From Haplodiscus bocki (taxonomy: Eukaryota), in contig OZ296654.1 of the NCBI GenBank assembly GCA_965655095.1, positions 31,372,001 to 31,436,000 on the forward strand: a DNA stretch of 64,000 bases, written 5' to 3'. Positions within the stretch are counted from its first letter, which is position 1, and every line of letters begins with the position of its first letter. This document shows, piece after piece, positions 899-53,217 of this stretch. Below the pieces are notes generated by a model, which saw only the letters and a program-made list of their open reading frames with translations, was not told the origin of the DNA and made no database searches. The position numbers and the translations under genes were made by a program.

Positions 899-1213
899 GA
901 AACAGTGGCAAACAACTACTTCGGACATTTGCTGGTGTGTGAGACTATTTTTCCTCTTTTGGCCCCATCAGGCTGTGTTATCAATGTTGCCAGTGGTGCT
1001 GGAAGATTGGGACAGGTGTCCAGCGAATTGCAGACGACCTTCTCAGGGGCTGCTAATATTGACACCATAACTGACGCTATGCAATTGTTTGTGAAGACAG
1101 CCCAAACAGACGAGCACACCAAACATGGCTTTTCCAATTCAGCCTATGGAATGTCGAAGCTGGGAATGATTTCTTCCGGAGTCGTTCACGCTAAAGAACT
1201 GGCTGCAAAAAAT
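899..1213 (+). CDS. Internal exon of a carbonyl reductase (CBR1-like classical SDR); upstream exons lie outside the window
   Basis: Acceptor tgtttcAG|899 and donor 1213|GTaagc, 315 nt, phase 0-0. Translation ETVANNYFG...VINVASGAG...SAYGMSKLG aligns by eye to CBR1 TNFFG...VVNVSS...SAYGVTKIG (catalytic Ser and YxxxK retained). Confidence 0.9.
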
Positions 1214-1729
1214 GTAAGCATTCATCCTTTAGGGTTGACATGTCATTTCCTCTTCAATGCCCAATTGTCAAAATTGAATTATACATTTGTATTGTAAAAA
1301 GAGATATGCCAATGTCATTTAAACGGCGTTCAGGAATTAGGTTTGCAAATTTTGCCAATTGCACGAAAAGCTCTGGGAAACATTCTTTCGAACAGTGCGT
1401 AATGTCATCGATTATTTTGTTTCTGATAGGTTGAAAATAGTAATATGAAGTAACTGTGATGCCATAAGCTGTCAGTTAATTGGGGGTTGAATATATTGCA
1501 ATGGCATTACGATTGGGGCGAAAGATATCCCAGATATTGGGGTATGTAGTTTTACTTCTGGTTACTGCAGCTAGGAAGGCAACAGTTGAGTTTTTCTTTT
1601 TTACATATTCTGTCTGAAAGGAAAATGTGTATTGGAAACCGGCTACGATATTTTTTATCCTGTCCAAAACTTGCATTTTGTGACTATCAGAGAGTCCAGT
1701 CATCTAGTGTAAAAGGTCAAAAATGGTCT

Positions 1730-4125
1730 TTTTTGTCTAGTACTTGTCCAGTTTTGTGTTGTTTACTGTACAGACTTCCTAATCATTGGACAGCAAAATG
1801 GCGTAACCTGGAAAGACTTGACTCTCGTATCATATTTTTCAGGAGACTGGCACGTACTTGCTCATTTTCACTTGGTTACTGAGGGAACTTCTCAAACATT
1901 GGGCAGCAAAATGGCTCAACCTGGAAAGACATGGTTGACATGTCAACTTCTCGAATAAGACTACATGACTTTTTTGATTTTTTCGGACAAACTTTTAACT
2001 GAGAGCTGGTGTAGCATTTCTAAAAGTGTTAATCACATCTCCGATCATGGTTTTAAATGTATTTCATGGTTTTGCTGTCCTTGTTGGACAGTAGGTGGTG
2101 TTGGAGGAGGTTGGAAATTTTTTGTTTTTCTTTTTTTTTGGTACAAAAAGACTTTTCAGAATCGGTTCATGTTTCTCGAGGTGAAGTTTATAAGAGCACA
2201 CCCAGGAGCACCCAGAGAGGACGGATTCGAAACATGTAAGGAAATGAATTCAATATGCGAATGCCAAATGTTTTCTAAGTGGGGAATGAATTGCGCACAC
2301 GATGATTTTACACAAGAAACTGAGTGCTGGGAAGAAAGGGGAGTTGAGTTTGCAATGATGCATAGCTTTCAAGCAATGTTGAATACTCAATTGGTGGGGT
2401 GTGAACAAAATTCTGGTAGTTGCGACAAAAGAATTTTGAAAAATTTTGCTTCACAAAAGTAACACGGGATGATGTATGTTTCAGGAACAGTTTTCGAAAA
2501 CACGGACACAAGAATGCAAAAAGTAAATATTTTTCGTGGCAAAGACTCTTGCTGAAATGGGATTTTATCTTTTTCTGAGGTTTGAATGCTTTTAAAAGTA
2601 CTGTTGTTGACACGGTTTATTTCGTATGAGGGACCGCTAAACGTTAGAAATATTATCAGCGGCGCGAAAGTTTGAACGATAATCAAAAAAGACGAAAAAA
2701 ACTTCGAAAACATCAGTCTTGAATGAGCTTCGTCGTAGGATGGCGGTGGACCGATCGGTCTTGGGATTTGATTCGTTAACACGTACAACGGCAGATGCGA
2801 ATGAGGGTGAGAAAGCGGCATTTACAAAACTTCACGAAAACACAAACAAACTAAAAAAAATCAGAAAAAGAAACTTCGTTTTATCTAATTACTCAAGTAA
2901 TTGTCCTATTACTTGGGGAAATGAAGGGAACCGGGTCAGGTTCGCCAACACTCGCATAAATGCGGAATAATTCCCAAAAACTCGCCGAAGCGGTAGAGAC
3001 ACAGCAGAAGCTGGAAAACTTGGCACAGACTATGTCCGGAGAGAGAAATCTTTTTGGCGTCACTGGAAAACCAAGAACAGACAGAAAGAAGGCTCTACAA
3101 GGGAAAATGGCTCTGAGCCGGACAAATTTTTGGGAAACTTTGTGAATTTTACAGTTTTAGGGAAAGATTTTCAAAAGAGATATCCCACTCCTGTCACTAT
3201 TTCAACAATCGCTTATTTTCGTTGTCTAATTTAGTTTTTGATAGCTCTCGGAATGCGAGAGGAGATTTTTAGGAAATTTGAAGTTGTTAATGTCTTTAGT
3301 TTTGCAAATAAATGGCTTGAATTATTTCAAGTTGTGGTTAAACAGAGATTTCATGTACAAGACAATTTTATCAGACAAGATAAAGAAAAACTGCTCGACT
3401 TAGATTTCAGTGGTTGAGGGTTGAATGATTTGCTGAAATTTCACTTTTTCGATATAACTTTCTGTGCAGCTGCAAGTTACGAGTCAGGTAAAGAGCAAAT
3501 GTAAACAGTCGAAATAAAACAATATTAGCGGATAAAAAGTAATATTTAAAATGAAACAACAGTAGTTTTGAACAGAATTCTTATTTGCATTTTCAATATG
3601 CAGGTGGATTCAATAAATGTTACAGAGCTAAGAGCATAGATGTATGAGCGTATTTATGTTTTTAACTGTTTTAAAACAACACAAGAAAGAAATAACAGCT
3701 GTCTTTTCTCGTATATGTAGCTGAGTCTTTCTCTTTCTGAAAAGGCTGAAAAAATGTTAGTCATCGATTTCCCCCTCTCCGCTCCGTTATATTTGTAAAC
3801 AAAGTATCGTAGATGAACAACTTGTAAACTTGTTTTTTCGTCTTGTTGACTAATTTTGGCCATTTAGAGAACTAGAAATTTTTTGCATAAAACGTTTTTT
3901 TAGGGCACGGACTTTTGTCTCTTTTTTGGCGTTGTTTACTGTGCAAGTCCTGGTGAAACTGGGCGGCAGAACGGCGAATCAGAAAAAAAACATGATTGAC
4001 AGATCAACTTTTCGACTATCAGACACTAACAGGTTTTTGCCTCATTTCCACTTTTCGTACATCCTTTTGATAGACATCTGGTGTAGTGTTTCTAGAAGTG
4101 TCAATCATGTATCCGATCAAAGTTA
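1730..4125 (+). repeat. Diverged dispersed repeat copies inside the intron (~1730-2060 and ~3915-4125)
   Basis: ttgg(a/g)cagcaaaatggc..aacctggaaagac at ~1787 and ~1899, with a related copy at ~3959. ctggtgtagcatttctaaaagtgttaatcacatctccgatca (~2006) matches ctggtgtagtgtttctagaagtgtcaatcatgtatccgatca (~4078). Confidence 0.55.
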
Positions 4126-4883
4126 AAGTGTCTCTCAGACTTTCAGTCTGTCAACTTCATCTTTGTTTTCAACTGACAAAGTCAGAATGTTTTGCGAAGT
4201 TCCGCTTCGACTCTATTATATTTCGCTCAATATTTCATATTTGGAATCACAATCATTCGTCAATGAATCTGGATTTACATCAAATTTGCCAGTTGCACGA
4301 TGAAGCAAAAGTTCAGGTGAAAAAAAATGACCCATCATTTTTTCGAAATTTCCCGTAGAATGCGTCTAACTTTGTGGTCATTCTAAAAAATTTTTGTTGC
4401 CAAAATTTAGGCTTTTTTGCGAAATAAAAAGTGAAAGAAATTGAGATTTTCAGCTGTTTGCACCTCTTTCAAGAAAGTTTTTTAGTCCGATTGCGGCATT
4501 TCAACGTTTCTTCTGTAATATTTGGAAGGCGGAAAATACCCCAGAGTTGGCCTGGCGTCTTGTAAATAAATTCTGTTGATCTCTAGTTTACTGCTTTTTG
4601 GGAGAGTGACAATGAAGCTTGTAATTTTGACACGATCAGTTCTAATGGTTCCCGCAATTCAAGTGCTATTTCGTACCTTTTTCAGAAAGTCCCGAAGTTG
4701 GGTTCAAAAAAACTTTCCCGCCGATGTCAAGTTTCCATTGGTGTCGTGTTATCGCGCTCAATTTTCTCGTCTCCTGTGGTAGGATTATCTGATAACAAAT
4801 GTGTCGGACACAGTTATTCCCGTGATCCACAATAAGTTGTATCCATTTCGTTTCAATGTCCATGGTCGATTCTGGGTGAAACT

Positions 4884-5212
4884 AACTTAGGTGTCAATGA
4901 TGTTGTTGATTTTAGATTGCGGTGATCAACATGTGCCCGGGTTGGTGCAAGAGTGACATGGCGGGGAACTTAGGTGTCAATGATGTTGATTTTAGATTGC
5001 GGTGATCAACATGTGCCCGGGTTGGTGCAAGAGTGACATGGCGGTGAACTTAGGTGTCAATGATGTTGTTGATTTTAGATTGCGGTGATCAACATGTGCC
5101 CGGGTTGGTGCAAGAGTGACATGGCGGGGAACTTAGGTGTCAATGATGTTGTTGATTTTAGATTGCGGTGATCAACATGTGCCCGGGTTGGTGCAAGAGT
5201 GACATGGCGGGG
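4884..5212 (+). repeat. Four tandem copies (80-83 bp) of intron 3' end plus first 51 nt of the last exon
   Basis: Unit aacttaggtgtcaatgatgttg(ttg)attttAG-attgcggtgatcaacatgtgcccgggttggtgcaagagtgacatggcgg(g/t)g. Exon starts at 4916, 4996, 5079 and 5162. Confidence 0.97.
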
Positions 5213-5341
5213 TGGGAGAGACCCCCCAGGACGGCTGCTCAGGGCGCAGACACTGTCTACTGGCTCGAAACTCTCGATCACGACAAACAAATGCAAGTCA
5301 GTGGAAAATTCTTCAGAGACAGAAAAGAAGTTCCTTGGTGA
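5162..5341 (+). CDS. Terminal exon of the carbonyl reductase (not in the ORF track)
   Basis: After gattttAG|5162, phase 0: IAVINMCPGWCKSDMAGWERPPRTAAQGADTVYWLETLDHDKQMQVSGKFFRDRKEVPW*, TGA at 5339-5341. Matches the CBR1 C-terminus pattern NACCPGWVRTDMAG...EGAETPVYL...GQF...W. Confidence 0.9.
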   Translation: MAVINMCPGWCKSDMAGWERPPRTAAQGADTVYWLETLDHDKQMQVSGKFFRDRKEVPW

Positions 5342-26600: not shown

Positions 26601-28000
26601 TGGAAACACCACTTCAGTAGAAGAAAACTCCTTCTTCAGGTAAATTCACATCGTTGGCTGTTGCAGGCAAGAATTGACTAAACGTGAAAATACACGTCTT
26701 CAGAATCAAGAGTTCATCAATTGAACTTGGGCAATGCTTGATTGTTCACGATGTTTGCTCTGGCCAGCTATATGACGGCAGTACTACGGATGATAGTAAA
26801 TGTCGATGTAATGTTGCACCTCAGAAGAGGAGCATGCCATGAGGTTTCTGTTGACGTGCGACGAATTCCAAAAAGAAACAGCTGGAACAGATCCTATTAA
26901 GGGGTCCAACTATTTCGTGTATAAATCAAACCTCTACCACGCATTGTGCCGACTAAATTCTTTTTCGCCATGGATGATAACATGTTTCTTTGAAATGGGC
27001 CACAGCACTCCTGGACTTGCATACATCTATGAAAAAAATGAGAACTGAAGGAACAGCAGCAGACTCAATGGTAATTTTGGAAATCCATTGTCTTACTTGC
27101 AACATGGGACACCCCAATTGACGTTGGTGATTAGAGAACAACTCTGTAATCCATAGTCAAAGACTTAGGACTAACCGTTTAGATTATGATTGCCCTTTTG
27201 ATCACCTGGATGCTATCAAGCCAAAGCTATTTTTGCTGCAACTGTGTTTTCAACTTTTTCAATTGGCCATGAGCACTCGGCGGCTCTAGTTCAAAATCGC
27301 AACTAATCCAAAAGAAAACAAAAACCCGTCGAGTCCTTCTTCATTTTCCGTGATATGATTCAAGATTTAATCATGAGGTACAACTGCAGAAAAGAATTTT
27401 GTTATTTATTCAGCTCCGTTCGAGAAATACTTCCGCTAGCTCTAGATGACTACAGCGCTTCAATTTATATGTTTATGAACTTGTAAAGTACTTTCAACAA
27501 ATTGCACTTTATACACCAGATAAATTCGAGCTTAACAGAAATTGGGCTGGATTTCGAATCACTTGCGAGACAGAAAAATCACTTTACAGCTAAAACTTAG
27601 GGTGTCTTGGGGTGTGATAGTAACGACAAGTCAAATGAAAAGGGGAGAATACTCGAATTTTGATGAAGATGGCATGCGATGCAAAAAACGACCTCACTTT
27701 TCTGATTGTTTGAAATTCTATGCCTTCTCTTTTATCAATACGAGACGGAATTATCCTGATACATCGCGAATTTCCAAAAAAAAAACTTGACTAAAGACTC
27801 AAAAAAATTTTAGTGACTATCCCATCAGAAGTCAAACCCTTTGGGGTAAAACTATGAAACATACCATCACTGATACGCTATAGTACCTTTACTTAGTACA
27901 AAATTGAGTTTTTCTAGGAATGGTTCGACTCAAAAGAATCAATTGTCTTCGAAAAAATCGAGCTGATTTAACACGCGATTGCCAACTCGGTTGAATAGAC
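23651..28000. repeat. Segmental repeat copies 2 (23651-26320) and 3 (26318-28000), joined head-to-tail
   Basis: Direct sequence match to 12477-15764. Junction tcaatccATTtccccggcgg joins the unit end (15764) to the unit start (12477). Confidence 0.97.
24885..25495. repeat. Minisatellite array, 5 units of ~111-133 bp, in copy 2 of the element
   Basis: tgtctcac...gaaaa.tttcgtaggg.aaccc anchors at ~24919, 25038, 25166, 25299 and 25410. Confidence 0.9.
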
Positions 28001-29623
28001 AAATAAAAGGTGAAAAATTCCACAATACATCTACACAAAGATCAAATGTACTAATTTGCAGATGCTTTGCAATTTGTATTGTCGGTTACTCCATGGACGG
28101 AGGCATTCGCAACAAAAAAATTCGATACGATAACCTTTACCAAACGCCGGAATCGAATCGATTATTCTCGATCGGAAGTATTGGCTTTTTATTTAAAGGT
28201 AAAAAAGACGTTCCACTTCCTCCTAGATTCGTTGATATCCTAATAATCGAAAAATGGACGCACTCAGACGAATAGTCCGCCAGAAAATTAATTTCAGCAA
28301 ACACAACTGAAAACAACCTAGTTATTTATCCAATTTTTCTGTCGGTCAAAAATGAAACAGTAAATCGATGCGACTCTACAGGACCACCAGGTCGCATGAT
28401 TTTGAATTATCGCTGATTGAACGCAATCCAGTTTAGGGCCACGCAAAAAATCACCAGTCAAGAACGATACAACACAAAACGTCTTTTTCTAACTGCTTTT
28501 CAAAAAGTACTGTCGGAAACCCAAAAAACAACTTTTTTCTACGGAAATCTAGGTAAACTTGATTTTCCACTAGAATGACGAATTGCAACTACAGGTCTCT
28601 TGGTGTTTTTTAACAAACAACGCAAAGGAAAGTTTCATTAAAGTTTCAAAAAAACGGACGTTTTCCAAAGTAACACTTCGACCAAAACCAACACTACTAT
28701 ATTGCGGATGATTCAGTTCATGTTTTGAACCTGCCGTGAATGTGCTCAGTCACGACTCTGTTTTTTCAAATACACTTTTTTTTCCGAAAAATTTGAAAAC
28801 AATTTAGGTGAGTTTTGTTTTTCAACCGTTTAATTGGTCACTCCCTGAACAAAATTTCATTTTAAAAAGCGAGCATGTTAGGAAAAACCCACGTAAAACA
28901 TTATTTACAACAATGCGAGGGAGCAGAACAAAACTTTTTAGTGCCGCGTAACCAATGACTATAAAAATATCTTTCCATCCATTGCCGAAATTTAAGGGGT
29001 AGAGGAAATTGAACAAAAAGAACTGAATCACTTGCTGCGCCTGACTGGGAAGTGTAATACAGAAGGAAATGGCAATCTGCAGCAAGAGAAAAATTTTTGT
29101 GCTCCAAAAATAACATCAAAACTAATGGAAAGAACTGAAGTCTTCGTGTTCCAATTAAATGGGAGACACCGAAACAAATGTGTTTTTGTCATCTAAGTCT
29201 GATCCTGTCCATTTCATCCAGAAAGGACGCTATGATCCTAGACAGATGTGAAGGTTTCGAAGAGAGCACTTTTGACGGAAATCCCAAGTCCTAACTACTT
29301 TGATTTTCACGTGAAACTCTCACATGTGGACAATAAAAACACTCAAACAGCAGTCAGTCTCTGGAACCTTGCAGTTCTTGAGTGAACCGAAGAGTCAATT
29401 TAATGCTAAATACGGGAGATTGAGCGACACTAATCTTAGGAAAACATTTTTGTTGGGAGATGCAAGTGAAAACTTCGCTACAATTTTAACCACAAGTATA
29501 ACAATTTCCCTGCAAAAACCTTGGAGAAGATCATATCTGGTACTCTGAGCAGGCTCTGGACTGCTTGTTTTGGAACAACTCTTTGGCTGGGCCGTTTTCA
29601 GAATTTTGAACCTAAGTGATGCT

Positions 29624-29823
29624 NNNNNNNNNNNNNNNNNNNNNNNNNNNNNNNNNNNNNNNNNNNNNNNNNNNNNNNNNNNNNNNNNNNNNNNNNNNNN
29701 NNNNNNNNNNNNNNNNNNNNNNNNNNNNNNNNNNNNNNNNNNNNNNNNNNNNNNNNNNNNNNNNNNNNNNNNNNNNNNNNNNNNNNNNNNNNNNNNNNNN
29801 NNNNNNNNNNNNNNNNNNNNNNN
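29624..29823. other. Assembly gap (200 N)
   Basis: Run of N. Confidence 1.
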
Positions 29824-32800
29824 CCTATTGGCTACATGACGACATGCTCGGTCACTCGACGTGCTCACGTGACCAAACGAGAAACAAATACACAGCGCTA
29901 AGCCCTAAATTTCAGTTGCTCGCTCCCGCTCACTTGCGGGCGGAACTCGCTCACTTTTAACTTCGAACTTCTCTTCATTTTTCTCTTATTTTACCAATTC
30001 CTCTCTTTTTTGGAGCGAGCGAAATTCTTCCAAGACGTTTTCAATTTATGTTTTTACCAAACTCCTTTTGCATACCATCAAATTTTTCCGAAGACGTTTT
30101 GAAATTTTAGCTGTGGCAATTTTCAATTGCATCTGATCGAAATTAATCTCAGACATTTTCAAACTACTTGTTTGCCAAATGTCAATTGAATCTCATCGAA
30201 ACTATTCTAAGACATTTTCAAAATATGTAAATGCCAGAATTCTCCTCTCTTTGGTTAGCAAGTCCATAGTCTTGCCACTGGAGTCTGAACAGTGTCCACT
30301 AACGCTAGCTTCGGTATTAGCGTGTGTGGATTTCGTGAATGAGCTTCGGTTCTGAAGCAAGAGTGAATGTTAACCTGCACAACCCTCACAAAGTTCCTCG
30401 AAGGAGGTTTAATTCGCGTTATATAGACAAAGTCTCACCTCATCTGGTGCTGTGGTAACTTAGAAACCTGTGGAAGTTCCTAGTTACGGCTTGAACACGC
30501 AAAAACCGTCTCTTTTGCAATTATTTTCAGACTCCTTACCCATTCTCATTCTTAAACACCATTCCCCACTAACCGATTAGCCAATCCAGCGCTATCCGAC
30601 GGACCTTCATCCTGCAGTCAAAACCTACAAGTATCCTCAGCCGGCTTCGGTATTCGTAAGTTGTGTTTTTGCTCTGATCTAATAGAGGTATTATCACTAG
30701 TCATTCTCCTCTGAGAAATCGTTCTCGATAAACCGCAAAAGGATGCCGCGCCCGAGTTGAAAAGGAAGTAAGAGAAAACCACAAGGTTGCCGCTTACAGC
30801 AAGCTTTATCTGAGCAATAGATAAAACCTAACTAATTCAACTCATCCAAGAAATCAGGAAGATTTATTCACGGTTGTAAAGACGGAGATCTAAGACTTTT
30901 CGCCCAGTTGCTAAACTGAGGCAGGTTAATCGGGTTTCAAACGAACGCCTAAGAGAAATATTTAACCCTAAAAGTCAAACGCACGTTATTTCCTCGTCAA
31001 CTGTTCATGCTTGACAAAAAGAGGACCTAAGAAGCTTGACTGGGTCGACTGCTTTTATGGCATACTACCAGAGTCTGAGATGAAATTGAATTAAATAAGT
31101 CAAGTAAACTAAAAAAAACAAAACGTAAAACCGAAGCTAGGAAAAACGAATGTAATCATTCGCCCTACCCAGAAAACCAATAAAACATTTCTTCAACTTA
31201 GTCCGTAACTTTGGTACACATTTCCGCTTTCTTTGGTAAGATTTGCAAATTGATATCAATAACTTTTTTCAATTATGTATTCAATATTAAAAATTGAACT
31301 AAATTAATCCCTGTGAGTTTCATTTCTAAACTGTGAAGTATTATGATAGTGTTTTACGCAATTTCAAAATTTGATTTTATGGCAAAGCAAACACTAAAAC
31401 AGAATACATATGTGATGTGGGCTACTTCCGCAACACCTACGAAGTAGACTCAGGGGCCTATTCTATTGCCAAGAATCCCCCGGACTCCGCAAGTCCCTTC
31501 AGGTAGACTCGAAATGCCGAAGAAAGGCAACTATTGAATCGATCTGCCGACTGTCTTTTGATAACTGGTCATTTTGCAAAAGCCTGTTTTTAGAGATTTC
31601 AAATGCTTTATCATCATTGTGGTGTATCGGAGAATTCGCTGTTGCTGATTCTTCCCATACATAATCAAGAGAGAAGCACGGAAGTTTGATGTAGTCTCTG
31701 GTTCTTCAAAGGAGAAACCAAGACCGCTCGTCAGAAAGTTGGTTACAGTAGCCTACTCTTCCAGAGCCTCCACGTCCACACGGTAAAAAACCCCCAAGAA
31801 GTTATCGGACCCATCAACGCGAGCTACCGGGAAAAGAGCCGGCTCGAGCTCTGGCAAATCGGGATCAAGAGGAATTGCCATCCCGATCCTCATTTGATTT
31901 GGGCCCTGCTCTTGTACCGGAGGAGATTGTGGTGAAGTTCTGTTTGCCATTTTGTAAATCGTTACGAGAATTAAAAATGATTTTTAAGTTCGAAGTTATT
32001 ATAAAAGTTGCTACTTGATATAAATATTTTGGATTGCATACATTTCGCCCCTAAAAATCTCACCTTTCCGAATTTTTTTTTATCTTATGCACATTCACAT
32101 TTATAGGATTAGCTGCCGTTTCAGTATATTCACCAAATAAATCACCTCCTATTTTGTACTTCCTCTTCGTTCACCAAGTCCTTGCTAGTAGAACTAACGC
32201 AACTTTGTCCGCGCGGATTAAAAAGGCGAAGTTACAAAACTTATAACAGTGTGCGTTTTTGAGACTTTCTTACACGATAACGCAGACGTATGGCTGCAAA
32301 CGCCGCTTTGCAATAATAGCAAAGGCGAACAAAAGTAAATATAATTGGTAAGTAGTTTACCTACAACCACTGTACTTGCGACAAACTGGTGCAACCAGTG
32401 AGGTTCCTTGAAGGGAGTAACAATTTTTTGGTGCAATTCCGTGGAGCTATTTTTATATGGACCCCTTCTTTGACTCTTTTGCTACAGTGAGTCACATTCT
32501 CGCAAACAATTTGCTTTTCTTTTTGTTTCTACTGTTCTCTTCAAATGACCGTTTTTTTGGATTGACAATTCCTTCCCTGTTGAAATCCAACCTCCGAGAC
32601 CGAAACAGGAGATCACCTGGTGATACTTTGGACTGCTGAAACTTCCTTTAGGATGAGATGCGAAATTTTTGTAACACTTTTTTTGATCGTTGCAGTCGTA
32701 ACCTTTTTCTTCATACCTTCTTACCTTTCAGCAGTTATCCAACTACACAACATTGCCTTCAACCAGATTTCCGATATTTCAAAGTTTAGTTTCCTGGTTA

Positions 32801-35800
32801 ATGTCATCGTTGTGCTCTTTCATCTTTTTTCTCCTCCAGCAACTGGGTTTTCTTTCGGTGTTATTTGTCTTGATATCCTACAGGTCTTATACTAAAGTCG
32901 AATCCGAAGCACCTAGCCGCTACTCTTCTGGGTTATTCTTCCTTACCTGGTCAAAAGTTGGAACAGATATTGTCTTGCCAAAAAGGTTCTCATTGTGTTA
33001 TACATCCTCCAAAACTTACCTATTTTACTCAAATGCTTCGTATTTCGGCGGATACCCTAACATCCACTCTTTTGTATGTAATTTCGGCCCAATGAGAGAA
33101 GACCTGGTTCTGAATTTATATTTCCTACTGCTCGCTACCTTGGTACTACTTCTGGGACGAAGTTATTTGCTAGCTATAATAAGAGTGGTACAATTCTTGA
33201 GACAATCTACTGACTATAATTAGATGCCACAAAAATTGGAAAAAACTCCACCGGATTGGAACAACTTAGAAGACAAAAGGCAACGTACTCCAGTAAATTG
33301 CCAATAGACCATAGCTTCTAAAGACGAAAATCTGTCCGTGATCATCACTTGTTTGTAGTGCACTTCCAACTACGACTTCTGGATCCGAGTAACAATATAT
33401 CTAGAGGGAAACCCACAGATCTAGAAACAAGTAAACATATGGGAATATAGCCCTCTGCTTGAATCACTATCTGATGCACTTCCCAAATACTACGATTTTC
33501 CAGAGCCTCATCTACATTATTATCAACTTCATTTTTTTGTGGAAAAGATTGACTATTTCGACTCAAAGTATTCCTAGGTTACCAAAATGGCTGGAACTCA
33601 TCTCGCTCACCCTGACTTAGCCTTAGATAGGTTCTCTGGCACGGGTCCCGACCAAGATGCTGATTCATTTATACAACAGATCGAACGAAAAGTCATTTTC
33701 GCACTTGGACCTGACGCAGAGTGGTTACGAGAGTAACATCGAAGCGGCTACCCCTTGGATTGACATTATGACAGGGTTTATTGCATAATTTTCAGAAGGC
33801 CGGAATAAATTCGGCTGGAGGTGGAACACTATATTCGAACAGAGGGCGAGGAAATTCCAAACTTTCTCCGCCGAATCAAAAGAACTGTGGATAAAAGTTC
33901 GCCCGATGATATGACCGGAACTGCAGGATCAGAAAAAATGCCGAATGAGAAGCCCAAGCCAGGCCAAGAAGTCAACCGTATATGTACTATAGCCTAGGAG
34001 GACTCAGACTAAAATATCTTCAACGGAAAGCTCAAGACTATCCAAAGGAGCGTCCGAACCCTACTTGGAACGATATCTGTACACAAATAATGCGAAAAGA
34101 TTTGATTTTAGAAGTCTCATCCACTTTTCTATCCCATGAAGAACAAAACAAAGCAGAATTGGCGACACTTGGACAGGAGATGAAAATTTATCGATCAGAG
34201 TAGAAAAAACATCACATCAATGCCCTAGCAGTAACCGCCCGAACTTTGCATCCCGATCAATAGGGAAGACAAAAACCTGCCCGTGCCCGGTTCCGTAATT
34301 ACTGCCGTAAGATTGGAAATACACTAAAATGATGTCGCAAATAGATGCAATGCTGAGGAAGTACGAAAAGTACAACTTCACAAGTCTTCTAAAAAGAAGA
34401 CTGCTCCCATACCGCACTATTCCACAAGCAACTTCAACCGAAGACCACAAAATATTCACTCAATGAACCATTTTCCTGATCGGGAAGATAAAAGAAGGCC
34501 AACGAACGAACGTGTATCCAACGACGAACCAAATCGGCAGTTGAGGCCGAAAATTTCGCTCCTCCTGAACCAAAGTTTTTTCCAAGGAACATTGGCTTGA
34601 TTTTCAAATTGGCAGTTTTCACATCAATCGATGAGTCTGACGATGAAGCGTTTGACCCAGTGCCTATGGGCTACTAAGGCCTCCAAAGTCTTTTTGTTTA
34701 TCGTAAATCTTTTTTAAACTTTTTTTTCAACTATAGGTCAGTACATTTTCCTCTGTGCTTACACTTACTCCTCCCTCTCTTCGTCGCGTTTGAACCAACG
34801 TCAAAGGACCTTGATTGAAAAACCTGTCAGCAACTCTAACTTCTCAGTTTACTTGGGTTCTCGGACGTGAACAGACAGATCTTCGAACATTATGCCCTGG
34901 CCATATCAAAAGCCAAACAGGTTTAACTTTTCGCTGCGAAGAGAAACTAAACATACTTCAACAGCAGCACATATTCATGGAAAAATTTTCGAAATCTTCT
35001 ATCCAGATTTCAAAATACTGACAGAATAGTCAAGATCAGAATTATTGAGAATCTACTCACTGTATTACTTATGACCAAAACAGTCCGAACAACAGAGTTT
35101 GCGAACCTCTTTGTGACCTTAAAAATCTCCAGAATACTGGACAAACGGGAAAACCAAAGCTTGGACGATCTACTGGTACAAACGGACACTAATTTTGGGT
35201 TTTTCACGAAGTGTCATTGATCAACAGTCCACCCGTTATCACTTTAACTATGTGGGAATATTTCGTACATCACTTCTACCACCCTGAAACAACTGAATAA
35301 TTACAAAAACTGCGGAGTGACAAACTTCTTAATAACCTTACATGCATCCACTAAATCATTTCTTCTACAATAACGTATTCTACTTCTATCCGAATAACAA
35401 CTAAGGGGCCCAAACCTCGTTGACCAGTTAACTCTTTGCTAGCAGACGCAATGGAATCTGGCTTGACGAAGCTTTCAGGACTACAAACACCCTTGACAGA
35501 CAGCCTGGAAGTAGGCTGAGGGACTTTAAAAAACTTGATAAAATTCACGGAAGAATCTAAATTGAAGTGGCAGGTTTCGACGATCGGTCTCATTCCGGCG
35601 ACTTTTATGAAACTCTCGGCGTCATTTTACAGTAGTGGAACTGCTTTTAAAAAGTTTTTACTCCCACTTTGTGCTCGTGCTCTCAAGGCGCCAGTTTGAT
35701 ATTACGGCAGTTTTCAATATCTACTCCTCTGACAGAACAGAGAGATTTTTTCCATTTGTGAATCTGGTGGCGACGTCAGCTATTTTTTTTCTCCTGTTTA

Positions 35801-53017: not shown

Positions 53018-53217
53018 NNNNNNNNNNNNNNNNNNNNNNNNNNNNNNNNNNNNNNNNNNNNNNNNNNNNNNNNNNNNNNNNNNNNNNNNNNNNNNNNNNN
53101 NNNNNNNNNNNNNNNNNNNNNNNNNNNNNNNNNNNNNNNNNNNNNNNNNNNNNNNNNNNNNNNNNNNNNNNNNNNNNNNNNNNNNNNNNNNNNNNNNNNN
53201 NNNNNNNNNNNNNNNNN
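53018..53217. other. Assembly gap (200 N)
   Basis: Run of N. Confidence 1.

What the first reader, a model, noticed from the sequence alone, without database searches (positions are those of the whole stretch)
4881..5341. Quadruplicated splice acceptor in a carbonyl reductase gene: three decoy exon starts precede the only productive one
Seen: the intron end plus the first 17 codons of the last exon occur four times (AG at 4914-15, 4994-95, 5077-78, 5160-61). Splicing to copy 1 gives IAVINMCPGWCKSDMAG-NLGVNDVDFRLR*. Copies 2 and 3 likewise stop at TGA in the next unit. Only copy 4 gives the full C-terminus. The best branch-point motif (ACTAAC, 4881-4886) was cut by the duplication and precedes only copy 1. 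Established: 3' splice-site choice usually favours the first suitable AG after the branch point. Inference: this is either a copy-number-tuned hypomorph producing a truncated isoform lacking the last ~42 aa, or splicing skips three acceptors. Each unit also holds AG|GT (ttAGGTgtc), the substrate in the tandem-duplication model of new splice sites and of recursive splicing.
Basis: partly seen in the sequence, partly recalled or inferred. Interest (0 to 1): 0.8.

Follow-up and report, generated by a model that had tools for sequence, protein, structure and literature searches.

The report
Splice acceptor repeated four times
An 83-base stretch holding the end of an intron and the first 17 codons of the last exon of a carbonyl-reductase gene is repeated four times (three times in a sister copy of the gene), so the splicing machinery must pass up to three look-alike acceptors to make the full enzyme. 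This is a multi-copy version of a situation already known from the human CBS 844ins68 variant, and which acceptor is used here has not been seen.

Summary
An 83-bp unit (32 nt of intron end plus 51 nt of exon) stands four times at 4884-5212. All four AGs, the three decoy reading frames with their TGA stops, and the ACTAAC cut by the duplication are as described.

It is not an assembly slip:
- A second assembly of the same locus gives four units at 100% identity.
- A 95%-identical inverted segmental copy 354 kb away carries the same array with three units.
- The units differ from one another by private mutations.
- The tandem paralogue and a related species have a single acceptor.

The gene is a four-exon CBR1-like short-chain dehydrogenase. 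Between the two array-bearing copies it is under purifying selection (omega 0.14; exons 1.1% diverged, introns 4.9%). One low-depth RNA-like contig from another sample joins exon 3 directly to the productive exon form.

My best reading (0.5) is a copy-number-variable minisatellite across an acceptor, tolerated because the last acceptor is used often enough. The rival (0.3) is that the first acceptor wins, because it alone keeps the conserved CTAAY branch motif, which would make the gene a hypomorph. The AG|GT recursive-splicing idea fails. No RNA from this genome was available, so acceptor choice is unresolved. I class it as a new member of a known kind, of moderate interest.

The parts
899..1213 (+). 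Exon 3 of the CBR1-like gene ('gene 2'): 105 codons, ETVANNYFG...KELAAKN, phase 0 at both ends. Donor AAT|GTAAGC follows 1213.
   Evidence: ORF and sequence. Matches human CBR1 1wma_A residues 109-212, E 5.7e-12. The four-exon CDS is 831 nt with no internal stop. Exons 1 and 2 lie upstream of the window at G000:C7:31369848-31370029 and 31370564-31370717.
1214..5161 (+). Intron 3 as needed for the full-length protein (3948 nt). It ends at 4915 instead if the first acceptor is used. It is filled with very high-copy repeats at about 1620-2111 and 3916-4407.
   Evidence: (word depth above 30,000 in those bins).
4881..4886 (+). ACTAAC, the likely native branch site, with its branch A 30 nt before the first acceptor. 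The left edge of the duplication (4884) cuts through it.
   Evidence: A homologous CCTAAT sits at the same distance in the paralogue's intron 3 in both segmental copies and in an isolated fragment.
4884..4966 (+). Unit 1: intron end 4884-4915 (AG at 4914-15) plus decoy exon start 4916-4966. The frame runs to TGA at 5003-5005.
4967..5046 (+). Unit 2 (80 nt): one GTT missing from the U/G-rich tract, AG at 4994-95, and G>T at 5045 (Gly>Val, which breaks the GGGG run).
5047..5129 (+). Unit 3: AG at 5077-78, sequence equal to the consensus unit.
5130..5212 (+). Unit 4: AG at 5160-61. Its 51 exon bases (5162-5212) run on into unique coding sequence, so this is the only productive acceptor.
5162..5341 (+). 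Productive last exon CDS: 59 codons plus TGA, IAVINMCPGWCKSDMAGWERPP...KEVPW*.
   Evidence: It aligns to the extreme C-terminus of pig and human CBR1 (1n5d_A 225-276, E 3.3e-5; 1wma_A 225-274).

Best explanation
A young 83-bp minisatellite lies across the intron 3 / exon 4 boundary of an active CBR1-like short-chain dehydrogenase gene, and its copy number varies.

Origin. A blunt tandem duplication, with no microhomology at its edges, copied 32 nt of intron end plus the first 51 exon bases. Unequal exchange or slippage then changed the copy number, to 4 units here and 3 in the inverted segmental copy.

Consequence. Each unit is a potential acceptor, but only the last one is in phase with the rest of the exon. 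I think the array is tolerated because the last (distal) acceptor is used often enough to give the normal 276-aa enzyme. The upstream units would then behave mostly as intron, with at most a minority of transcripts ending in a truncated 246-aa product.

What is shown: the anatomy, the copy-number difference, the ancestral single-acceptor state, and purifying selection on the gene. What is inferred: the use of the distal acceptor.

A possible aid to distal choice, untested and taken from vertebrate work: every decoy exon start is followed by GGGG..UAGG, and the productive one by GGGGUGGGAGAGA.
For: The array is real:
- TRF score 630.
- A second assembly record of the locus (ENA ERZ26859043, contig ctg79863) is 100% identical over 20,357 bp and has four units.
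- The copy at C7:31.00 Mb has three units in both assemblies.
- The units carry private changes.

The single acceptor is ancestral. The tandem paralogue, in both segmental copies, and both genes of a related assembly have one acceptor.

The gene is alive:
- Both copies have intact 831-nt CDSs and canonical splice sites.
- Copy A versus copy B shows 6 synonymous and 3 non-synonymous changes: dS 0.033, dN 0.0047, omega 0.14, binomial p 0.006.
- Exons are 1.1% diverged and introns 4.9% (Fisher p 2.5e-8).
- The array-free neighbour gene has omega 0.64.

RNA. One 82-nt contig of run X1 joins 1186-1213 directly to 5162-5215, three bases past the repeat. It overlaps a second contig (5189-5274, plus 3 unlaid letters) by 30 letters, which is k-1. 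No X1 contig lies on 4916-5161.

Precedent. In human CBS 844ins68, G runs between two identical duplicated 3' splice sites promote use of the distal one (PMC1802585, citing Romano et al. 2002).
Against: - No RNA from this genome's own species label was found.
- X1 is a different coded organism, its depth is 2, and whether it has the array is unknown. Its contig therefore shows the junction, not the skipping of decoys.
- Only unit 1 keeps the conserved CTAAY branch motif. 5'-to-3' AG scanning and proximity would also favour it.
- Selection on exons 1-3 would also be seen if a truncated protein were useful.
- The coding stretch after the array has 1 synonymous difference in 129 nt. This is not significantly below the local non-coding rate of about 2.6% (P about 0.15).
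- G runs also follow the productive acceptor, so that cue does not clearly discriminate.
Confidence: 0.5

Rival explanations
1. The first acceptor wins. Splicing goes mainly to 4915|4916 because unit 1 alone has the native branch site and is met first. The mRNA then stops at 5003-5005, in the last exon, so it escapes nonsense-mediated decay. The product is a 246-aa protein without the last 42 residues of the SDR fold. Both array-bearing copies would be hypomorphs, or on their way to pseudogenes, buffered by the neighbouring paralogue.
For: - A CTAAC/CTAAT motif at about -30 is conserved between paralogues whose introns are otherwise diverged. It is lost in units 2-4.
- All four acceptors are otherwise identical from -30 to +51.
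- RNA folding shows no structure that would hide the decoys (z 0.22).
- My own recollection, not checked here: scanning for the first AG after the branch point, and proximity effects with duplicated sites.
Against: - Omega is 0.14 with intact ORFs in both copies, lower than in the array-free neighbour at 0.64.
- The array persisted while the copies diverged by 5%.
- The only spliced contig has the productive form, and none covers the decoy region.
- The CBS 844ins68 precedent goes the other way (PMC1802585).
- Other introns of these genes use degenerate branch motifs, and each unit keeps CUUAG at -26.
Confidence: 0.3
2. The array is a regulated or dosage-setting device. The units give a useful mixture of full-length and C-terminally truncated isoforms, and the number of decoys sets the ratio.
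For: The two gene copies differ in unit number, 4 versus 3. Purifying selection on exons 1-3 is compatible with it.
Against: - There is no sign of selection on the decoy-specific peptide. The decoy units carry Gly>Val, Asp>Val and an indel, and the decoy tails differ in length.
- The truncation removes the part that aligns to the CBR1 C-terminus.
- The relative and the paralogue have no such array.
- No isoform data exist.
Confidence: 0.1
3. Assembly artefact: the true locus has a single unit.
For: Tandem repeats can be miscounted. I could not see single long reads. In short-read run X4 no contig was laid on 4900-5063.
Against: - Two assembly records agree at 100%, with 4 units here and 3 in the sister copy.
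- Private mutations mark the units.
- Run X3 has contigs in every bin of the array.
- A 329-bp array is short compared with long reads.
Confidence: 0.03

Closest known systems
Human CBS 844ins68 (a 68-bp tandem duplication of the intron 7 / exon 8 junction of cystathionine beta-synthase)
   Same: A tandem duplication spans the intron end plus the exon start and creates identical 3' splice sites in tandem. Use of the upstream one would break the frame. G runs lie between the sites. As cited in PMC1802585 (Romano et al. 2002), the distal site is selected and G runs promote this.
   Different: CBS has two acceptors, this locus three or four. The CBS outcome was measured; here it is inferred. The animal and the gene differ. 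Whether G-run-dependent control exists in this lineage is unknown, and G runs also follow the productive site here.
Minisatellites whose first unit spans an exon-intron (donor) boundary: F7 IVS7 (37 bp x5-9), IFI6 (6-16), CBS IVS13, LMNB2, PDGF (PMC1557585)
   Same: The units repeat an exact splice site. Copy number is polymorphic. Usually only the authentic site, or it and its nearest neighbours, are used.
   Different: Those arrays repeat 5' splice sites, and the authentic site is the first one, so 5'-to-3' scanning picks it. Here 3' splice sites are repeated and the productive one is the last, so the same directionality would work against the gene.
Internal tandem repeats that change gene structure between paralogues in segmental duplications (PMC2812944)
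   Same: The repeat number differs (4 versus 3) between two copies of a gene lying in a segmental duplication.
   Different: I read only the abstract of that paper. It concerns human primate-specific paralogues in general, not a repeat across an acceptor.
Carbonyl reductase 1 (CBR1) / 20-beta-HSD, classical SDR family
   Same: Exon 3 and the last exon align to CBR1 residues 109-212 and 225-276. VTGSYKGIG, NNAAIA and SAYGMSK stand at the expected places.
   Different: NNAG is NNAA here. Enzyme activity is unknown.

Membership tests
CBR1-like classical short-chain dehydrogenase/reductase | N-terminal TGxxxGxG dinucleotide-binding motif | tested here: met
   VTGSYKGIG in exon 1. The exon-1 fragment hits adh_short positions 1-38, E 1.6e-4, which is below the cut-off for the fragment alone.
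CBR1-like classical short-chain dehydrogenase/reductase | Catalytic Ser ... YxxxK | tested here: met
   INVASGAG and SAYGMSK in exon 3, aligned to CBR1 VVNVSS and SAYGVTK.
CBR1-like classical short-chain dehydrogenase/reductase | Sequence similarity to solved CBR1 along its length, including the C-terminal segment | tested here: met
   1wma_A E 5.7e-12 (residues 109-212). 1n5d_A E 3.3e-5 (residues 225-276, to the last residue).
Duplicated 3' splice site of the CBS 844ins68 type | Tandem duplication spanning intron end plus exon start, giving identical acceptors | tested here: met
   The sequence is identical from -30 to +51, apart from the GTT deletion in unit 2.
Duplicated 3' splice site of the CBS 844ins68 type | The distal acceptor is used, so the mRNA is normal | tested here: inconclusive
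   One depth-2 contig from another coded organism has the productive form. No RNA run of this organism was found.
Duplicated 3' splice site of the CBS 844ins68 type | G runs between the identical sites that drive distal choice | tested here: inconclusive
   GGG and GGGG are present in every interval, except that GGCGGTG ends unit 2. Their function cannot be tested here.
Boundary-spanning minisatellite (F7 IVS7 type) | The repeat unit includes an exact splice site, and copy number varies | tested here: met
   4 versus 3 units between the two segmental copies. Variation between individuals could not be read from the contigs.
Boundary-spanning minisatellite (F7 IVS7 type) | The repeated site is a 5' splice site, with the authentic one first | tested here: not met
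   Here it is a 3' splice site, with the productive one last.
Recursive splice site / AGGT duplication-made intron | AG|GT preceded by a usable branch point and pyrimidine tract, and a path that restores the reading frame | tested here: not met
   In unit 1 the AG at 4889-90 is 4 nt after the branch A. In units 2-4 it follows purine-rich exon sequence. Using GTGTCA as a donor leaves a 58-nt insert (58 mod 3 = 1) or needs 22-25-nt introns.

The most novel reading that the evidence does not exclude
A natural multi-copy acceptor minisatellite in which the spliceosome reliably passes two or three complete upstream acceptors, the first of which has the better and evolutionarily conserved branch site, and uses the last one. 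That would be distal 3' splice-site choice enforced by local sequence (GGGG..UAGG after each decoy) in a non-vertebrate animal, with unit number varying between gene copies. It would be a ready-made natural titration series for testing scanning versus competition models of 3' splice-site choice.
Probability: 0.35. Interest if true: 0.6.

Novelty: new member of a known kind. Interest (0 to 1): 0.38.

Why it matters
Identical splice sites in tandem are rare natural experiments on how the spliceosome chooses among equals. The well-studied arrays repeat donors, where taking the first site is harmless. The one well-known acceptor case (CBS 844ins68) has only two copies.

This locus offers three- and four-copy versions of the acceptor problem inside a gene that is still under selection. 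The best branch site stands in front of the wrong acceptor. If the last acceptor is used, the locus shows strong distal selection outside vertebrates. If the first is used, it shows a gene being disabled by a minisatellite while still looking intact to gene finders.

For annotation, it warns that automatic models may pick the wrong acceptor here.

Tried and rejected
- **RNA runs.** Both sequencing-run searches gave no run on record as RNA for this organism. X3-X6 are genomic short-read contigs, and X2 laid nothing.
- **Copy number from reads.** The single read-laying run listed only the longest pieces, so pieces inside the array were not shown. Copy number in individuals X3 and X4 could not be read.
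- **Run X4.** The zero depth of X4 at 4900-5063 proves nothing. The tool warns of holes, and X4 has A-like contigs elsewhere.
- **Metagenome scans.** I scanned the metagenome collection for the exon 3 / exon 4 junction and for the unit-to-unit junction. Both were blank.
- **'Copy B is just the other haplotype of copy A.'** Rejected as a whole-contig haplotig. Homology is limited to a block of about 27 kb (45 kb in B), and the flanks of A have only transposon-level matches elsewhere. X4 variants equal the B letters at 25 of 26 sites, but X4 also has A-type contigs. The coverage labels of 34.57x and 61.75x on the two contigs remain unexplained.
- **RNA structure hiding the decoys.** Rejected: z 0.22.
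- **Recursive splicing, micro-exons or AGGT intron creation.** Rejected; see the membership test.
- **The 5266 C>A difference in X3/X4.** This is the paralogue's last exon laid at 90% likeness, not an allele.
- **Full-length protein searches.** The exon-3 word search returned only genomic ORFs.

Full report
**Observation**

Tandem Repeats Finder reports one array at 4884-5212: period 83, 4.0 copies, 96% matches, score 630.

Each unit is 32 nt of intron end (AACTTAGGTGTCAATGATGTTGTTGATTTTAG) followed by 51 nt of exon (ATT...GGG, coding IAVINMCPGWCKSDMAG). The acceptor AGs lie at 4914-15, 4994-95, 5077-78 and 5160-61.

Frames opened at units 1-3 run into the next unit and stop at a TGA after 29-30 codons. 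Only the frame opened at 5162 continues, for 59 codons in all, to W-stop at 5341.

ACTAAC is at 4881-4886. The repeat begins at 4884, so units 2-4 have GGGAAC or GTGAAC there instead. Unit 2 is 80 nt long: one GTT is lost and there is a G>T at 5045. There is no microhomology at either edge of the unit.

**The gene**

Using the whole genome (G000; the window is C7:31372001-31436000) I fetched the upstream DNA and built a four-exon model:
- exon 1 at C7:31369848-31370029
- exon 2 at C7:31370564-31370717
- exon 3 at window 899-1213
- exon 4 at window 5162-5341

All splice sites are GT..AG. The CDS is 831 nt and the protein 276 aa.

The protein carries VTGSYKGIG, NNAAIA and SAYGMSK. Exon 3 aligns to human CBR1 (1wma_A residues 109-212, E 5.7e-12). 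The last exon aligns to the very C-terminus of pig and human CBR1 (1n5d_A residues 225-276, E 3.3e-5). The exon fragments alone give only sub-threshold adh_short hits.

Splicing to unit 1 would therefore give 217 + 29 = 246 aa and remove the segment that aligns to CBR1 residues 237-276. From general knowledge of the SDR fold (my inference), this part belongs to the core.

**Relatives of the locus**

- **Tandem paralogue.** About 3 kb upstream lies 'gene 1', with the same four exons. It is 70-71% identical in exons 2-3 but 93% identical in exon 4, and it has a single acceptor.
- **Segmental copy B.** The gene pair lies in an inverted segmental duplication. C7:31,366,584-31,393,801 matches C7:31,015,275-30,969,820 at 88-96% identity. 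Copy B of gene 2 carries the same array with the same unit junction, but with three units. Its middle unit has an A>T (Asp>Val). Its last, productive unit has two changes in the intron part, one of which lengthens the U run.
- **Related species.** A related assembly (ENA ERZ25071366) has a tandem CBR pair, 58-60% identical in exon 3. Each gene has one last exon, and intron 3 of the gene aligned to gene 2 is about 360 nt.

The single acceptor is therefore ancestral. The array is specific to gene 2 of this lineage and arose before copies A and B diverged by about 5%.

**Artefact?**

Contigs of another assembly record (ENA ERZ26859043) are 100% identical to the window region over 20,357 bp, with four units. 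They are also 100% identical to copy B over 18,000 bp, with three units. The contig names point to a different assembler, and the data are probably from the same sample. That makes this a check on the assembly, not on the individual.

The private mutations in single units also argue against assembler stutter. Short-read contigs of run X3 cover every bin of the array. The table did not list the pieces inside the array, so I could not count units in reads. I put the artefact reading at about 3%.

**Splice signals**

All four acceptors are identical from -30 to +51, apart from the GTT loss in unit 2. The differences lie further out.

Upstream, only unit 1 has CTAAC at -30. The paralogue, in both segmental copies, and an isolated fragment have CCTAAT at the same distance, in an intron that is otherwise hardly alignable.

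Units 2-4 still have weaker candidates: CUUAG at -26, AUGAU at -16 and GUGAC at -42. Other introns of these genes use degenerate branch motifs, so the later acceptors are not obviously dead.

Downstream, each decoy exon start is followed by GGGG AACU UAGG U, and the productive one by GGGG UGGGAGAGA. UAGG and GGGG are known vertebrate silencer motifs (title of PMC1079783). Whether they act here is unknown.

The whole region has no unusual RNA structure (z 0.22).

The AG|GT in each unit is not a credible recursive site or new-intron seed, for two reasons. First, the AG lacks a pyrimidine tract, and in unit 1 it sits 4 nt after the branch A. Second, GTGTCA used as a donor leaves a 58-nt frameshifting insert or needs 22-25-nt introns.

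**Selection**

Gene 2 in copy A versus copy B has 9 differences in 831 nt, of which 6 are synonymous and 3 non-synonymous. This gives dS 0.033, dN 0.0047 and omega 0.14 (binomial p 0.006). Introns differ at 4.9% (Fisher p 2.5e-8). Gene 1, which has no array, has omega 0.64 (4 synonymous, 9 non-synonymous changes).

The array-bearing gene has therefore stayed under constraint while carrying the array, so it is not a decaying pseudogene. This does not by itself show that the last acceptor is used.

The 129 coding bases after the array show one synonymous difference. That is not significantly below the local non-coding rate of about 2.6%.

Neither copy shows gene-1 states in exon 4. Recent conversion from gene 1 therefore does not explain its integrity.

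**RNA**

No run on record as RNA was found for this organism.

Run X1 is a different coded organism, guessed to be RNA. It gave two contigs only:
- an 82-nt contig that joins 1186-1213 (0 mismatches, with T at 1213 as in copy A) directly to 5162-5215 (3 mismatches);
- an 89-nt contig on 5189-5274, with three unlaid letters at its 5186-5188 end.

The two contigs overlap by 27 laid plus 3 unlaid letters. That makes 30, which is k-1 for 31-letter words, so I read them as neighbours in the assembly graph. On that reading the first contig ends in the productive TGG, not the decoy AAC.

The three mismatches fit the synonymous gene-1-type codons at 5182, 5185 and 5188. This placement is an inference, because I could not see the letters.

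No X1 contig lies on 4916-5161. This shows that the predicted junction is spliced in a close relative or another population. It does not show that decoys are skipped, since the array status of X1 is unknown and its depth is 2.

**Reading**

- **Best explanation (0.5).** A copy-number-variable minisatellite lies across an acceptor and is tolerated because the distal acceptor is used sufficiently.
- **Main rival (0.3).** The first acceptor dominates, and the gene is a hypomorph producing a truncated protein.
- **Minor readings.** A useful isoform mixture tuned by copy number (0.1), and an assembly artefact (0.03).

**Known parallels**

The same geometry with two copies is the human CBS 844ins68 allele. 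There, the distal of two identical 3' splice sites is selected and G runs between them promote this (PMC1802585, citing Romano et al. 2002).

Minisatellites that repeat donor sites are described for F7, IFI6, CBS IVS13, LMNB2 and PDGF (PMC1557585). In those, the authentic site is the first one, so 5'-to-3' scanning is harmless. Here the productive site is the last one.

I therefore file this as a new member of a known kind. It has more copies than the CBS case, and the copy number differs between two gene copies.

**Limits**

- I did not identify the organism. Other notes of this scan call the genome an acoel worm (s1-364306, s1-359294), which I did not test. One run labelled coral metagenome holds 12% of the sampled words.
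- The difference in coverage labels between the two contigs (34.57x versus 61.75x) is unexplained.

Noticed in passing
L012:2735-2941 (G000:C7:31302735-31302941): An isolated 207-bp fragment holds the end of a gene-1-type intron 3 (with CCTAAT) plus the first 51-52 bases of the last exon. It breaks off at the same point (after GGCGGGG) as the right edge of the 83-bp unit and runs into (TTG)n. Two independent rearrangements share one breakpoint, so this may be a fragile G-run.
   Followed up: partly
L010:6382-6503 (G000:C7:31366382-31366503): A 122-bp piece of the last exon (bases 40-161, 97.5% identical to gene 2) lies about 260 bp upstream of gene 1's start codon (L010:6766), at the edge of the segmental duplication. 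It may be a relic of a further gene copy.
   Followed up: no
G000:C7:31366766-31369587 (gene 1) versus window gene 2: Exon 4 (93%) and exon 1 (84%) of the two tandem paralogues are far more alike than exons 2-3 (70-71%; overall dS about 1.1). This suggests past gene conversion at the gene ends. Between segmental copies, gene 1 has omega 0.64 and gene 2 has 0.14.
   Followed up: partly
window 1620-2111 and 3916-4407: Intron 3 holds very high-copy repeats. Word depth is above 27,000-33,000 in genomic contigs, against 20-45 for unique sequence. There are many contig joints between the two blocks (for example 1679 to 3924), which suggests two copies or ends of one abundant small element.
   Followed up: no
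ENA ERZ26859043 contigs ctg79863 (copy A) and ctg87737 (copy B): The coverage labels in the contig names are 34.57x for the contig with the window's copy and 61.75x for the contig with the sister copy. Copy A may be present on one haplotype only. In run X3, A-type and B-type contigs have similar depth (about 20 versus 15-22).
   Followed up: partly
window 29624-29823 and 53018-53217: Two 200-N assembly gaps lie inside the window. I left them as they are.
   Followed up: no
window 4901-4935 (and each unit): The U/G-rich tract before each acceptor (ATGTTGTTGAT) can pair with exon bases +10 to +19 (ATCAACATGT), which puts the AG in a loop. The pairing is absent in the paralogue, and the region as a whole folds no better than shuffled sequence.
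   Followed up: partly
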